This document shows, one piece after another, positions 20,955-24,900 of a stretch of 64,000 nt of DNA. The position numbers and the translations under genes are program-made. The notes under the pieces were generated by a model. It saw only the letters and a program-made list of their open reading frames with translations. It was not told the DNA's origin and did not search any database. The stretch's first letter is position 1. The number at the start of each line of letters is the position of its first letter. Origin of the DNA: Eukaryota sp. TZLM1-RC. Taxonomy: Eukaryota; Protista; Metamonada: BaSk clade. The DNA is taken from contig JAUPSS010000014.1 in the NCBI GenBank assembly GCA_040285825.1, positions 1-64,000 of the forward strand, read 5' to 3'.

Positions 20955-23900
20955 TTATTAAATCACAGATGCTGCTTATTGCTACGAATTATACTATCTG
21001 GGTGAGCATTCGATGGTAAACACAGTTCATCATATATCCCTTTCTGATTATTTCCATTGCAACCCATTTACCCAGATTTTTAAGTTCGTATTTTCTTAGA
21101 AATTGAATGAATGAAGCGTCTAGTCCACCAGATGGATAAAAAACCAAAGGAGTAACATTGTCCACCCATCCACTGTATTTCTCTATCTTCTCATTCTTGC
21201 TTCTTCCGATGGCTTCTTCAATGCACGAGTGGTACCCACCTACCATTGTTAAATCGTAACCATGAGTTTCGTTTGTATTTAGCAAATCAATTCTTCCTGT
21301 AAAAAGCTTTTGTTCTGTTTGAAGACCTGTTTTCTCAGCAATTGTTTTGAGAATAGAATCATGTTTGTCAATCCTCATTCTAGAAAATTGCTCACAGTTG
21401 GCTGAATGGTATAAGGAGTCTGCACAGTGACCACATAATGCACAATGGTGTGTTTGATGTCTGTGCATCAAAAGTCGGCATTTCAGTATATATCTCATTA
21501 GATGATCTGGCAAAGTAAAGTCTGCTGTTACAGGTAATGAAGTCAGTATAGTTCCTGCTAGGGGTTTACAATTGAGGGTGTAATCGTTAACTTTTGTTGT
21601 TGAGGAAATCTCACTATGCGTGTCTGGGGTCCTTAGTTGGACAAGAAACTCCTTTTGTGCCTTCTTGTAAAATTGGTTTGTGAGAAGGGATTGAAGTCTC
21701 TTGCCGTTATTGAACTCAGAAATTTCTGTTTTGACAAAAGTTGTGGATAACAGTACGTCATATTGGTCCAACAACTTGTCCAATTTCATGGAATTCATGG
21801 TTATGTTTGCTGATGCTACAGAGGCGTGATAACATAAATCAGCAATTTCGCAGTAATTTTTGAGCCCTAGGCCTCCAAAACTAGCTACTGGAAATGAAAC
21901 TAGTTCTTTGTATTTGGGTAATTGACCTAAAGTGTTCGTAATGAATTCAACTAAAAGATCGTGGCATGCTGCGAGAGCTTTAGTGGACGTTGTCGGTTTA
22001 TGAGTCCTAGCCGTAAACGAGAGTCGAGTGTTCAAGCAAGTTCTTATCAATAGTAGTTGATTTTGGATAGTTAGTTCAGAGATGTTGTTTATGCAGTTTC
22101 TAAATTCGTTTGGGCTTGAATTGTACAGCATTTCTTCTGCTCCAGGACCGACAAAACTACCTAACACAGTAAAAGTGTCTTCATTTGATAACGTGGATGT
22201 CTTATTAGTATTAACAGTGAGGTCAAGCAATTGAAGCGAATCGGTCATTTCTTCTATAATTTGCTGAGAACTTTGTACATTTGTGAGGACAAAGATATCA
22301 TCAAGATAAGCAAGAAATATAGAATCCGGAAAAAGTGTTTGAAGAATGTTGATTGGTTCAACTAATGATGTAGCAAATAACAAAGGACCAAGTGGGTCAC
22401 CTTGCTTGACTCCTTTTTCAGAAATTACTTCATCTTCTCCATAAAACAGACTTGATGGGGACAAGTAGCTAGTCTTGTAGAATGGCACTAAACGAGGGCA
22501 ATATTTTTCTAAAGCGCTCAACAATTTTCCTCGATTCAATTCATTGAACGCATTTGCTATGTCAAATTTGATACACCTTTCGAATTTGGATCCTAGGTTT
22601 TGTCTAATGGCGTGAATAATACATTCGGCTCCGCCTGATACTTTGACTCCAAATTGGTTGCTTGAACTTAAATACTCTGTATTGCATTTGTTCAGAATGA
22701 TTCTGGCGATGACTCTATAAAAAAGCTCTCCAATGGCGATGGGACGTAATTTGTTACTGGTTTTTGGCAATGCGATTAAACGGCTTGAGGTCACAGCAAA
22801 TTTCAGGCATTCACTTACTGTACCATTATAGAAAGAGTTGGCCAAAAAATGAATACATCTTATTATATTGTTATTCAGGCATTCTTTCAATAGTTTACCA
22901 TGCCAGTGAAATACTCCACCCTCTGAAGCTGGCATTTCTAAAATTGCGTCCTCCACTTCTTGAACAGACAATGTCATGGAATTAGTAAGAACTTCAGGTG
23001 GAGACTCATAATTTTGTAAGTTATCATCTTTGGGATGTAATCGATCAAGTTCTTTTTTCACTTCAGATTGGCTAAGAGATAATTGTGCATTGGTTCGTGT
23101 CACCATATTCATGGCTCTCGACAGTTCATTGTCCCTTATTAGTTCTTGAACTCTCTTCTTGTTTATTCCACCAGGGTTTTTCAAGGTATGCTTTGGAGCT
23201 ACATGTGAAAGCATGGAGTCAATCACTTGTGATGAGTCCGATCCTGTGTTAATCGATTGGATATTCGACATGAATTGAATCAAATTTACGATGCAAGAAC
23301 CGTTGTTGATCTTCAGGCAAACTAGTGGGAGCAGCAATAGATAACGGCACTTTTGTTCTTGCGAAATTGTAACATTATTTGAGATATAATCAATGGCATA
23401 TCTCCAAGACACTTTGCTTTTAAGCCTTGTGTAATTCAGCGATCCGAAACGTCGGGTGAGCTCAACCATTGTGTTACTTGATATTTCTGGAACCAGTTGT
23501 TCCTGGGGGCCTTGATGCTGGGAATTCCAATGAATATCAAATCCCCTTGTTGTAAATATCTGTTGGCAGCATGGGCATTTACAGAATTGATGAAGTAACA
23601 GTTCATCTTGCGTGAGAGAGGGGTGATTATCTTTGAGGTGAGAGCAAAGGTCCCGTGATCTTTCAAAATTATCATCGCAAAATGGACATACATTTTTACA
23701 ACAATTGTCAGTAACGTTTTCAACTGGTGGAAAGGTCATGGGCTTCATAGTGGCTATCGGTTCGGGTGGTCTTTGTTGGCTTAACTTTGAGGGGGTAAGT
23801 AGTTTCATGTTTTCACTTGTGTTTCCTTCTGCCCCCAGTTTGGCCAGCTTGTCCGCCATTTGATTCCCGTGATGACCTACATGAGCAGCAATGTTTTCAA

Positions 23901-24900
23901 AATTAAAAGTAAATTTGTTCAGCTTCCACCCACTCATCAAGGATTTAATGGTGCTCAGTAAATACTTTAGCTTCTTTTGCCTTATAACTGCCTTTTTGTT
24001 TAAAGCGCGAACCAAAAGATTAGAATCAGAATATATCACAATTTCTTGGGGACAATTTTCCAGTAAAAGTAGTGAACAGAGAGCAACTCTTACAGCTTCA
24101 AACTCTCCATAATTGTGAGTGTTTTGATGTAAAGGCCCATAAAATGAGTATGTTTCGCTATTATATACATAATAGACTGCAAAACCACATTTACCCTTTG
24201 TTTTCAGGAAAGAACCATCTGTGTAAATCTTTAAAGGACTAGCATTAGTATCGGCATTCATAGTTGTATTCAAAGCAGTTGTTTCTTCAGGTACAATGCA
24301 GACGGGAGAATCAGGAGCATTGTCTATAGTTTCCATGGGGCGTTCAGAAAGAGCGAGATTGTGAGCTGTGGTAGGAGGGTGAGTGGAGTCATCACAATCA
24401 AAAGAATGTGTGGAAGGGTCAGTCATATTAGAAATAGTATCATTATCAGGAGTCATTGAAGAAGGAACAGAATGTAAATTATCTGAATCAGGATTAGTTG
24501 CAAGAGGGCCCTGTTGATACCCAAACCCAAGACCATAACGTTGGCTTGGGTTAATCAGTTGATGGTACAATTGAATAGGAGAGTCCTCAGAAGGAAGAGA
24601 GGACTCTCTGAATCATCGACAGATTCACTGAGAAAATGCACAACCTTTCTTAGTTATATGCATCCCGATGCCTTCTACAGAAATGATGTCAGAGCAGCTA
24701 CATCTTGTGTACCCATTGTCCCTTTTAAGACATCAAGACTGACATCAGGATGCATTTTTCATCAAATGCCTTGTCAACTCAGACCGCTTAGAGAACGGTT
24801 CAGTTCTGGGAGCAGAGCGAGATCAAAGCAGCAGAACTTTCTTTCTCTACGATTTTTTGACAAACACCTGAAATTTGGTCTAAATTTTTGGAGATCAGCA
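20955..24900 (-). mobile_element. CRE-clade-like RLE non-LTR retrotransposon joined to 28S rDNA at its 3' end; 5' boundary uncertain
   Basis: Single long ORF, 34-nt 3'UTR ending ...GATTTAATAA|ACTGAATAA (28S), same orientation as rRNA. The 5' side fades into garbled repeat-like sequence at ~24900-25015. Confidence 0.9.
20989..24570 (-). CDS. 1193-aa polyprotein: low-complexity N-terminus, RNase HI, two C2H2-type zinc fingers, reverse transcriptase, CCHC knuckle, restriction-like endonuclease
   Basis: RNase H: IYTDGS, NYGEFEAV, IYSDS, AHVGHHGNQMADKLA. ZnF: CPFC..HLKDNH and CPCC..HWNSQH. RT: LIALPK..LRPIAIGE, QFGV..GGAE, FDIANAFN, GVKQGDPLGPLLF, AYLDD. C-term: CALC..H...C, RIDKHD, RIDL, YDLT, KIEKY, PLVFYPSGG. 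The track start is TTG; the first ATG is at 24456. Confidence 0.95.
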   Translation of the reverse strand: MYHQLINPSQRYGLGFGYQQGPLATNPDSDNLHSVPSSMTPDNDTISNMTDPSTHSFDCDDSTHPPTTAHNLALSERPMETIDNAPDSPVCIVPEETTALNTTMNADTNASPLKIYTDGSFLKTKGKCGFAVYYVYNSETYSFYGPLHQNTHNYGEFEAVRVALCSLLLLENCPQEIVIYSDSNLLVRALNKKAVIRQKKLKYLLSTIKSLMSGWKLNKFTFNFENIAAHVGHHGNQMADKLAKLGAEGNTSENMKLLTPSKLSQQRPPEPIATMKPMTFPPVENVTDNCCKNVCPFCDDNFERSRDLCSHLKDNHPSLTQDELLLHQFCKCPCCQQIFTTRGFDIHWNSQHQGPQEQLVPEISSNTMVELTRRFGSLNYTRLKSKVSWRYAIDYISNNVTISQEQKCRYLLLLPLVCLKINNGSCIVNLIQFMSNIQSINTGSDSSQVIDSMLSHVAPKHTLKNPGGINKKRVQELIRDNELSRAMNMVTRTNAQLSLSQSEVKKELDRLHPKDDNLQNYESPPEVLTNSMTLSVQEVEDAILEMPASEGGVFHWHGKLLKECLNNNIIRCIHFLANSFYNGTVSECLKFAVTSSRLIALPKTSNKLRPIAIGELFYRVIARIILNKCNTEYLSSSNQFGVKVSGGAECIIHAIRQNLGSKFERCIKFDIANAFNELNRGKLLSALEKYCPRLVPFYKTSYLSPSSLFYGEDEVISEKGVKQGDPLGPLLFATSLVEPINILQTLFPDSIFLAYLDDIFVLTNVQSSQQIIEEMTDSLQLLDLTVNTNKTSTLSNEDTFTVLGSFVGPGAEEMLYNSSPNEFRNCINNISELTIQNQLLLIRTCLNTRLSFTARTHKPTTSTKALAACHDLLVEFITNTLGQLPKYKELVSFPVASFGGLGLKNYCEIADLCYHASVASANITMNSMKLDKLLDQYDVLLSTTFVKTEISEFNNGKRLQSLLTNQFYKKAQKEFLVQLRTPDTHSEISSTTKVNDYTLNCKPLAGTILTSLPVTADFTLPDHLMRYILKCRLLMHRHQTHHCALCGHCADSLYHSANCEQFSRMRIDKHDSILKTIAEKTGLQTEQKLFTGRIDLLNTNETHGYDLTMVGGYHSCIEEAIGRSKNEKIEKYSGWVDNVTPLVFYPSGGLDASFIQFLRKYELKNLGKWVAMEIIRKGYMMNCVYHRMLTQIV

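What the first reader, a model, noticed from the sequence alone, without database searches (positions are those of the whole stretch)
23825..24235. N-terminal RNase H on an RLE-type non-LTR retrotransposon
Seen: a complete RNase HI fold with all four acidic catalytic residues (TDG, GEF, SDS, MAD) and the His loop lies in frame upstream of the zinc fingers and RT. Knowledge: non-LTR elements that carry RNase H normally have it C-terminal to RT and are mostly APE-type; R2 and CRE elements typically lack it. Inference: an independent domain capture giving RNH-ZnF-RT-CCHC-RLE, which may help second-strand synthesis or clear R-loops in heavily transcribed rDNA. A compact (~1150-1190 aa), intact and possibly site-specific protein would also be of interest as a gene-insertion tool.
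Basis: partly seen in the sequence, partly recalled or inferred. Interest (0 to 1): 0.85.

Follow-up and report, generated by a model that had tools for sequence, protein, structure and literature searches.

The report
RNase H inside rDNA retrotransposon's finger arm
A jumping gene that targets the ribosomal RNA genes of the protist Skoliomonas really does carry its own RNA-degrading RNase H domain ahead of its reverse transcriptase; this layout is rare but was already described in oomycete Utopia elements, so it is a second, apparently independent case and not a new kind of element.

Summary
Window 23830-24234 (minus strand) encodes a type-1 RNase H domain (Pfam 2.8e-18; AF2 pLDDT 94; best fold match E. 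coli RNase HI). The D-E-D-H-D residues are all present. The domain is in frame with two C2H2 fingers, an RT, a CCHC knuckle and an R2-like restriction-like endonuclease (RLE) in one 1193-codon ORF. A 3.6-kb short-read contig spans RNase H to RLE without gaps.

The window is rDNA of Skoliomonas litria TZLM1-RC. The element ends in the 28S gene about 40 nt before the sarcin-ricin loop.

- This copy is 5'-truncated. Fuller copies carry about 1.17 kb more, including another finger pair, so RNase H sits between finger modules.
- None of the six copies I examined is open from end to end.
- RNase H upstream of RT in an RLE element was published for oomycete Utopia in 2015.

New here: the domain is the RNase H1 / non-LTR type, not Utopia's archaeal type. 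It is shared by at least three families in two Skoliomonas species, keeps its four carboxylates, and shows dN/dS 0.13. Its nearest relative in my tree is the host's own RNase H1 (97/86), but AU tests do not exclude other origins.

The scan had already flagged this domain order elsewhere in this genome (s1-637342, s1-644138) and had described the lineage (s1-633992).

The parts
20955..25022 (-). This copy of the retrotransposon (family A): about 4.07 kb, 5'-truncated
   Evidence: The 3' junction with 28S was fixed by alignment to the two intact LSU copies. At the 5' side, homology to fuller copies in L002 and L001 begins at 25022, and those copies extend about 555-600 nt further 5'.
24571..25022 (-). 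Decayed remnant of the N-terminal coding module (first zinc-finger pair and conserved linker), out of frame here
   Evidence: The same DNA is in-frame coding sequence in L002 and L001 copy 2. The window version differs by about 9 indels and contains stops. All short-read contigs carry the in-frame version (table 4).
20989..24570 (-). Uninterrupted 1193-codon ORF. First Met is at codon 39 (24454-24456), which is the start of gene model P0001 (1155 aa)
23830..24234 (-). RNase H type-1 domain (aa 113-247). Catalytic residues: D118 at 24217-24219, E156 at 24103-24105, D182 at 24025-24027, H233 at 23872-23874, D240 at 23851-23853
   Evidence: Pfam PF00075 E 2.8e-18; PDB alignment; AF2 pLDDT 94.3; Foldseek hits to RNase HI; coordinates
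23515..23688 (-). Second C2H2-type zinc-finger pair (aa 295-352), downstream of RNase H
   Evidence: C-x2-C...H-x4-H patterns; weak Pfam zf-Di19 hit; 28% identical to the upstream finger pair of fuller copies
22159..22767 (-). Reverse transcriptase core (aa 602-804; YLDD box with D757 at 22300-22302)
   Evidence: Pfam RVT_1 E 2.2e-20; R2 proteins are the best PDB sequence hits, 29 bits
21394..21444 (-). CCHC zinc knuckle (C1043...C1059)
   Evidence: C, C, H and C are invariant in the alignment of 10 RLE-type relatives
21121..21384 (-). Restriction-like endonuclease (RHD motif at H1070, D1095/D1106, K1128...Y)
   Evidence: Invariant H, D, K and Y columns. An AF2 model of the C-terminal 183 aa (pLDDT 73.6) has R2 retrotransposon proteins as its only significant matches, E 8e-5 to 5e-4, probability 1.00.
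20556..20954 (-). Target flank: the last ~390 nt of the 28S rRNA gene, starting about 40 nt 5' of the sarcin-ricin loop
   Evidence: Rfam LSU model positions 3006-3399; identical to both intact LSU copies from the junction onward

Best explanation
The stretch is the RNase H domain of an rDNA-specific, RLE-type non-LTR retrotransposon of Skoliomonas litria. A type-1 RNase H catalytic core was captured once, before the Skoliomonas element families and species diverged. It lacks both the hybrid-binding domain and the basic protrusion. It was spliced into the N-terminal zinc-finger arm, upstream of the RT.

[quoted passage not shown] Shown: domain identity, fold, catalytic residues, in-frame linkage, conservation across families, and purifying selection. 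Inferred: catalytic activity and its role in the integration cycle. The window copy is 5'-truncated and lacks the first ~1 kb of coding sequence.
For: Domain and fold.

Linkage: one ORF and one gap-free 3.6-kb short-read contig.

RLE type. No APE domain appears in Pfam.

Same order in other copies and families: family B at 38% aa identity (P0002, L001); L005 and L006 copies; and Skoliomonas sp. GEM-RC1 (P0094, P0095).

Conservation: the four carboxylates are invariant in all lineages. The RNase H codons of L001 copy 2 versus L006 show 21 synonymous and 11 non-synonymous differences, dN/dS 0.13.

Single origin: the element RNase H domains form one clade, support 99/94.

Independence from the other upstream-RNH lineage: this domain scores as PF00075 (67 bits) over RVT_3 (29 bits). 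P0087 carries only RVT_3 and falls in a different, starred RT clade among about 85 RNH-less RLE elements. Utopia's RNase H is archaeal-type with Arg in place of His (PMC4640811).
Against: There is no biochemical or expression evidence. No RNA run holding the element was found.

None of the six copies examined has an ORF open from the 5' module's ATG to the RLE stop, so current activity of the lineage is unproven.

The His equivalent to E. coli H124 is missing in family B and in GEM-RC1, so catalytic efficiency may differ between families.

R2 elements retrotranspose without an RNase H of their own, so the domain is not mechanistically required for this class.
Confidence: 0.8

Rival explanations
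1. Origin rival A: the domain was copied from the host's own nuclear RNase H1 gene, catalytic half only, in a Skoliomonas ancestor.
For: In the careful ML tree the element clade is sister to P0118, support 97/86. P0118 is a single-exon GEM-RC1 gene with two hybrid-binding domains plus RNase_H. It sits among ordinary host genes in the middle of a 2.8-Mb contig. Elements and P0118 both lack the basic protrusion and share the YGP, SDS..V..LN and LGA.G motifs.
Against: Both branches are long (1.4 and 0.57). AU tests do not reject placing the elements with the APE-type non-LTR RNase H group (p 0.38), nor placing P0118 with the other eukaryotic RNase H1 sequences (p 0.11). Loss of the basic protrusion is also seen in non-LTR RNase H domains. 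No TZLM1-RC orthologue of P0118 was found to break the long branch. Identity is only 34-39%.
Confidence: 0.42
2. Origin rival B: the domain was taken from another retrotransposon, an APE-type non-LTR element of the I/R1-like kind that carries RT-RNH, by recombination or template switching.
For: The element clade plus P0118 is next to a starred clade (98/88) of RT-RNH and APE-bearing proteins (P0182, P0176, P0217 and others). AU p 0.38 for uniting the elements with that clade. These domains also lack the basic protrusion.
Against: The ML tree prefers P0118 as sister. No APE-type donor from Skoliomonas was seen among the best 150 hits.
Confidence: 0.3
3. The domain is retained as a hybrid- or nucleic-acid-binding module, or for processing the rRNA co-transcript or R-loops, rather than for template removal.
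For: It is embedded in the DNA-binding finger arm. The His loop is variable. R2-type RTs can displace RNA without RNase H (background knowledge).
Against: All four metal-binding carboxylates are invariant across lineages that are only 38-47% identical, and dN/dS is 0.13. This argues for retained catalysis. Nothing here points specifically to R-loops.
Confidence: 0.1
4. Artefact: the RNase H belongs to a neighbouring gene, a nested insertion or a mis-assembly and is not part of the element protein.
For: The assembly is Nanopore-based, in a highly repeated rDNA region (PMC11316075). In arthropods, apparent RNH-RT proteins (P0181, P0187) are probably gene-model chimeras: one also has a second RNase H after its RT, and both come from genomes rich in ordinary RT-RNH elements.
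Against: There is one continuous ORF. The same order is seen at at least five further loci on four other contigs and in a second species. A gap-free short-read contig spans the junction.
Confidence: 0.02

Closest known systems
Oomycete Utopia elements (Kojima & Jurka 2015, PMC4640811; Ustyantsev et al. 2017, PMC5348765)
   Same: RLE-type, single-ORF, site-specific non-LTR retrotransposons with N-terminal zinc fingers and an RNase H domain upstream of the RT. In both cases the domain was acquired within one host lineage while relatives lack it.
   Different: Utopia's RNase H is archaeal-type (Arg instead of His; said to be plant-derived) and its target is the U2 snRNA gene. Here the domain is the RNase H1 / non-LTR type (PF00075, with His in family A), the target is 28S rDNA near the sarcin-ricin loop, the domain sits between finger modules, and the host is a metamonad.
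R2 elements (Bombyx, avian, turtle; PDB 8gh6, 9dou, 9nl2)
   Same: rDNA 28S-specific. N-terminal fingers, RT, CCHC, RLE. The C-terminal model matches the R2 RLE fold.
   Different: R2 has no RNase H. The insertion site is different. RT similarity is weak (29 bits).
RNH-bearing APE-type non-LTR elements (I, R1, LOA, Tad1, Ingi and others) and Dualen/RandI
   Same: They encode a type-1 RNase H without a basic protrusion, and these domains are close relatives in the tree.
   Different: In those elements RNase H is C-terminal to the RT and the endonuclease is APE (Dualen has both). Here RNase H is upstream of the RT and there is no APE.
Cellular eukaryotic RNase H1 (Skoliomonas sp. GEM-RC1 P0118)
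   Same: Nearest single relative of the element domain (97/86). Same catalytic core and same lack of a basic protrusion.
   Different: The host enzyme has two N-terminal hybrid-binding domains and a linker. The element took, at most, the catalytic core.

Membership tests
RLE-bearing (early-branching) non-LTR retrotransposons | Single ORF with a non-LTR-type reverse transcriptase | tested here: met
   RVT_1 E 2.2e-20. All 90 homologues outside Skoliomonas are RT proteins, and most have the same C-terminal domain.
RLE-bearing (early-branching) non-LTR retrotransposons | C-terminal CCHC knuckle followed by a PD-(D/E)XK restriction-like endonuclease; no APE domain | tested here: met
   Invariant C-C-H-C, RH(D/N), D and K..Y columns. 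The model matches only the R2 RLE region at E<1e-3. No Exo_endo_phos hit.
RLE-bearing (early-branching) non-LTR retrotransposons | Site-specific insertion with a constant 3' junction | tested here: met
   The window copy, both L001 copies and the L002 copy all abut the same 28S position.
RLE-bearing (early-branching) non-LTR retrotransposons | 5' junction with the same target gene (simple insertion) | tested here: not met
   The 5' flank is the 461-bp IGS repeat, not 28S sequence, in the window and in L001. This is a state of these copies, not of the protein family.
CRE clade (CRE1/2, SLACS, CZAR) | RT groups with reference CRE-clade elements | tested here: inconclusive
   No curated reference sequences were available. 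The only SLACS-named protein (Diplonema, P0054) lies in a different starred RT clade from the Skoliomonas elements in a quick tree.
CRE clade (CRE1/2, SLACS, CZAR) | Insertion into spliced-leader RNA genes | tested here: not met
   The target is the 28S rRNA gene.
Utopia | Insertion into U2 snRNA genes | tested here: not met
   The Rfam scan of the window finds only rRNA genes, and the flank is 28S.
Utopia | Archaeal-type RNase H (RVT_3-like, Arg at the His position) | tested here: not met
   PF00075 scores 67 bits against 29 bits for RVT_3. The position holds His in family A, Asn/Thr in B, and Asn or Ala in GEM-RC1 (which has a His one position earlier); none has Arg.
R2 clade | Insertion at the canonical R2 site of 28S and close RT relationship | tested here: not met
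   The junction is at Rfam LSU model position ~3006, next to the sarcin-ricin loop. The best R2 match is only 29 bits.
Type-1 RNase H (PF00075) | RNase H fold with four carboxylates (D-E-D-D), with or without His | tested here: met
Cellular eukaryotic RNase H1 | N-terminal hybrid-binding domain (PF01693) | tested here: not met
   No Cauli_VI/HBD hit in the element ORF. A local jackhmmer search for HBD found none in any element protein.

The most novel reading that the evidence does not exclude
A site-specific RLE retrotransposon lineage of a deep-branching metamonad copied the catalytic core of its host's own nuclear RNase H1 and inserted it between duplicated zinc-finger pairs of its DNA-binding arm. 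That would be a second, independent invention of the 'RNase H before RT' layout, and the first traced to a host RNase H1. The families also exchange a ~1.17-kb 5' coding module that is 92-99% identical while the rest of the protein is 38% identical, and that module begins with a PCNA-box-like motif.
Probability: 0.35. Interest if true: 0.55.

Novelty: new variant of a known kind. Interest (0 to 1): 0.45.

Why it matters
Why non-LTR elements acquire RNase H at all is still described as enigmatic (PMC5348765). This lineage adds a second, apparently independent capture upstream of the RT in an RLE-type element, using a different RNase H type and in a different eukaryotic supergroup. That argues for a recurrent selective benefit rather than an accident. 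It also offers a natural contrast to R2, which lacks the domain, for asking how the RNA template is removed before second-strand synthesis. The practical claim of a compact, intact insertion tool is weakened. The window ORF comes from a truncated copy, no copy I saw is open end to end, and activity is untested.

Tried and rejected
(1) Arthropod proteins with apparent RNH-RT order (P0181, P0187). One also has a second RNase H after its RT, and both come from genomes rich in ordinary RT-RNH elements. I treat them as gene-model chimeras, not as precedents.

(2) Loss of the basic protrusion as a shared derived character of host RNase H1 and the elements. Rejected as decisive, because APE-type non-LTR RNase H domains and some stand-alone enzymes also lack it.

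(3) AU tests meant to prove host capture. Neither alternative was rejected (p 0.38 and p 0.11).

(4) Two searches for a TZLM1-RC orthologue of the host RNase H1 (P0118) found none within the tool's length and word limits. This says nothing about absence.

(5) Expression. No RNA run holds the element. X4 laid nothing.

(6) Named clade assignment (CRE, NeSL, R4, Hero). Not possible without reference sequences. The RT tree is a quick tree with compositional warnings.

(7) An upstream ORF in the window. None exists, only out-of-frame remnants.

(8) Assembly error as the cause of the 9 indels at 24598-24885. Considered unlikely, because the adjacent 3.6 kb has no indel against the same contigs. It is not excluded, since this is a Nanopore assembly.

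Full report
**Setting.** The window is an rDNA array. On the minus strand it holds one complete unit: SSU 53055-51273, 5.8S, and LSU 50855-47556. Next come about 49 copies of a 461-bp spacer repeat (47625-24949), the element, a 28S 3' fragment (20944-20556), three more spacer repeats, an SSU 3' fragment, 5.8S, a second full LSU (18504-15203), and more repeats. The rDNA of locus L001, from the NCBI assembly of 'Eukaryota sp. TZLM1-RC', is 99.7% identical to the window's. 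Earlier notes of this scan name the genome Skoliomonas litria. Its genome paper describes a Nanopore assembly polished with Illumina reads and does not mention retrotransposons.

**Checking the observation.**
- ORF and domains: the only long ORF near the finding is 24570..20989 on the minus strand, 1193 codons. Pfam finds RNase_H at aa 113-247 (E 2.8e-18, nearly the full profile) and RVT_1 at aa 602-804.
- Catalytic residues: in phmmer alignments to E. coli-type RNase HI structures, D118, E156, D182, H233 and D240 fall on the catalytic D10, E48, D70, H124 and D134.
- Fold: an AlphaFold2 model built on 71 homologues has mean pLDDT 94.3. Its best Foldseek matches are all RNase HI.
- C-terminus: it shows invariant CCHC, RH(D/N), D and K..Y columns with other RLE-type elements. 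Its model matches only the endonuclease region of R2 proteins at E below 1e-3.
- Contiguity: a 3598-nt contig from public short reads covers 20933-24530 with no gap.

**What the copy is.**
- 3' end: the element's 3' end abuts 28S sequence about 40 nt upstream of the sarcin-ricin loop (Rfam LSU model position ~3006). Both copies in L001 and the copy in L002 end at the same 28S position.
- 5' flank: it is spacer repeat, not 28S.
- Truncation: homology to the other copies begins at 25022. Those copies continue about 555-600 nt further 5', so the window copy is 5'-truncated.
- Decayed upstream region: the 450 nt between 25022 and the ORF start is homologous to sequence that is in-frame coding DNA in L002 and in L001 copy 2. 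There it encodes a first zinc-finger pair and a conserved linker. In the window this region carries about nine indels and several stops. Every short-read contig carries the in-frame version instead (table 4).
- Full layout: a Ser/Pro-rich N-extension, finger pair, linker, RNase H, finger pair, RT, CCHC, RLE, about 1,530 aa in all. In Skoliomonas sp. GEM-RC1 two finger pairs precede RNase H and one follows it.
- Position of RNase H: it is embedded in the finger arm and is not at the N-terminus of the complete protein. The two flanking finger pairs are weakly similar to each other (28% identity, E 0.003).
- Intactness: none of the six copies I examined (the window, two in L001, and one each in L002, L004 and L005) is open from the first ATG to the RLE stop. 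The window has the only uninterrupted RNase H-to-RLE frame among them.

**Distribution and selection.**
- Who has the domain: an exhaustive profile search of 1.84 billion representative proteins with the RNase H domain gave hits below 1e-20 only in the two Skoliomonas assemblies. The next hits are at 1e-12.
- Families: the same order, RNase H then fingers then RT, occurs in family B (38% aa identity to the window ORF), in the more diverged L006 copy, and in GEM-RC1.
- Catalytic residues: the four carboxylates are invariant across these lineages. The His is present only in family A.
- Selection: between L001 copy 2 and L006 the RNase H codons differ at 21 synonymous and 11 non-synonymous sites, dN/dS 0.13. 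This indicates purifying selection while the subfamilies diverged.
- Single capture: the element domains form one clade (99/94), which points to one capture before the families and species split.

**Origin of the domain.** In a careful ML tree of 53 RNase H domains, the element clade is sister to P0118 (97/86). P0118 is a GEM-RC1 protein with two hybrid-binding domains plus RNase_H. It is encoded by a single-exon gene among ordinary host genes, so it is the host's cellular RNase H1. Together they lie in a starred cluster (97/89) with other eukaryotic RNase H1 and with RNase H of APE-type non-LTR elements, apart from most compact stand-alone enzymes. AU tests do not reject the two main alternatives (p 0.38 and p 0.11), and both branches are long. 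Host capture is therefore the best single reading but is not established.

**Comparison with what is known.**
- Precedent: Kojima & Jurka (2015) reported that all oomycete Utopia families, which are RLE-type elements targeting U2 snRNA genes, encode an RNase H upstream of the RT. They called that position unique among non-LTR elements at the time. That domain is archaeal-type, with Arg replacing His. Ustyantsev et al. (2017) confirmed it and noted that the benefit of RNase H to non-LTR elements remains enigmatic.
- No other precedent: I found no other report of this layout in the searchable library. A 2026 R2 review does not mention RNase H.
- An environmental example: among the 92 RLE-type relatives retrieved, only the Skoliomonas proteins and one environmental protein carry any RNase H. 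That protein (P0087/P0247) has a Josephin domain, an RVT_3-type RNase H, an RT and an RLE.
- Tree positions: in a quick RT tree P0087 lies in a different starred clade from the Skoliomonas elements. Its RNase H is also far from theirs.
- Conclusion: the Skoliomonas case is best read as a separate capture of a different RNase H type. It is a new variant of a known kind, not a new kind. Named clade membership (CRE and others) could not be tested for lack of reference sequences.

**Mechanism.** By analogy with R2-type target-primed reverse transcription, the RLE nicks the 28S target and the RT copies the element RNA from the nick. An intrinsic RNase H would then remove the RNA strand of the hybrid to allow second-strand synthesis. 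The domain's identity, its conservation and the selection on it are shown here. Its activity and role are inferred. No expression data were found.

**Verdict.** Interest is moderate. The scan had already flagged the same domain order on other pieces of this genome (s1-637342, s1-644138). It had also described the 28S-specific lineage (s1-633992) and the upstream finger remnant (s1-634061).

Noticed in passing
L002:6498-7670; L001:7295-8466 and 14645-15817; L005:4955-6106; window 24444-25022: Families that are only ~38% identical in protein over RNase H to RLE share a ~1.17-kb 5' coding module at 92-99% DNA identity. Similarity stops abruptly just after the codons for '...QQGPL'. This looks like module exchange between families (template switching or gene conversion).
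   Followed up: partly
L001:14641-14730 (start of the long ORF); also P0096 residues 3-10 and P0242 residues 177-184: Full-length copies begin with a canonical PCNA-interacting-peptide pattern (QTSLTGFF followed by KPSK). It is absent from the truncated window copy. It could be chance.
   Followed up: no
window 24598-24885: Nine indels relative to all short-read contigs and to the L002/L001 copies cluster in about 300 nt, while the adjacent 3.6 kb has none. Either this copy's dead 5' remnant is decaying or there is a local assembly error.
   Followed up: partly
window 62052-64000 (minus strand), running off the window end: A remnant of a second, different RLE-type non-LTR element: RT motifs, YMDD, and CCHC plus RLE, broken into several ORFs. 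It lies beyond the 1.5-kb repeats upstream of the SSU. Whether it has an RNase H cannot be seen, because its N-terminal part would lie beyond the window end.
   Followed up: no
window 53613-62006: About 5.5 tandem copies of a ~1.5-kb repeat lie directly upstream of the complete SSU gene. This is a second spacer repeat class, distinct from the 461-bp repeat.
   Followed up: no
window 18932-19162: A rearranged rDNA unit: only the last ~157 nt of the SSU are present, joined directly to 461-bp spacer repeats and followed by ITS, 5.8S and a full LSU.
   Followed up: no
P0087 / P0247 (ENA metagenome contigs, 6-9 kb): An environmental RLE-type element with a Josephin-type cysteine protease and an RVT_3 (archaeal-like) RNase H upstream of the RT. 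It may be Utopia-like. Its lineage was not determined.
   Followed up: partly
L007:8001-9116 (Skoliomonas sp. GEM-RC1): The host RNase H1 has two hybrid-binding domains and lacks the basic protrusion found in many eukaryotic RNase H1 enzymes.
   Followed up: partly
L002:5821-6480: Directly upstream of the L002 copy lies a fragment resembling the finger pair and post-finger region of a third, more distant family (29% identity to window aa 294-507). The gene model P0242 fuses it to the element.
   Followed up: no
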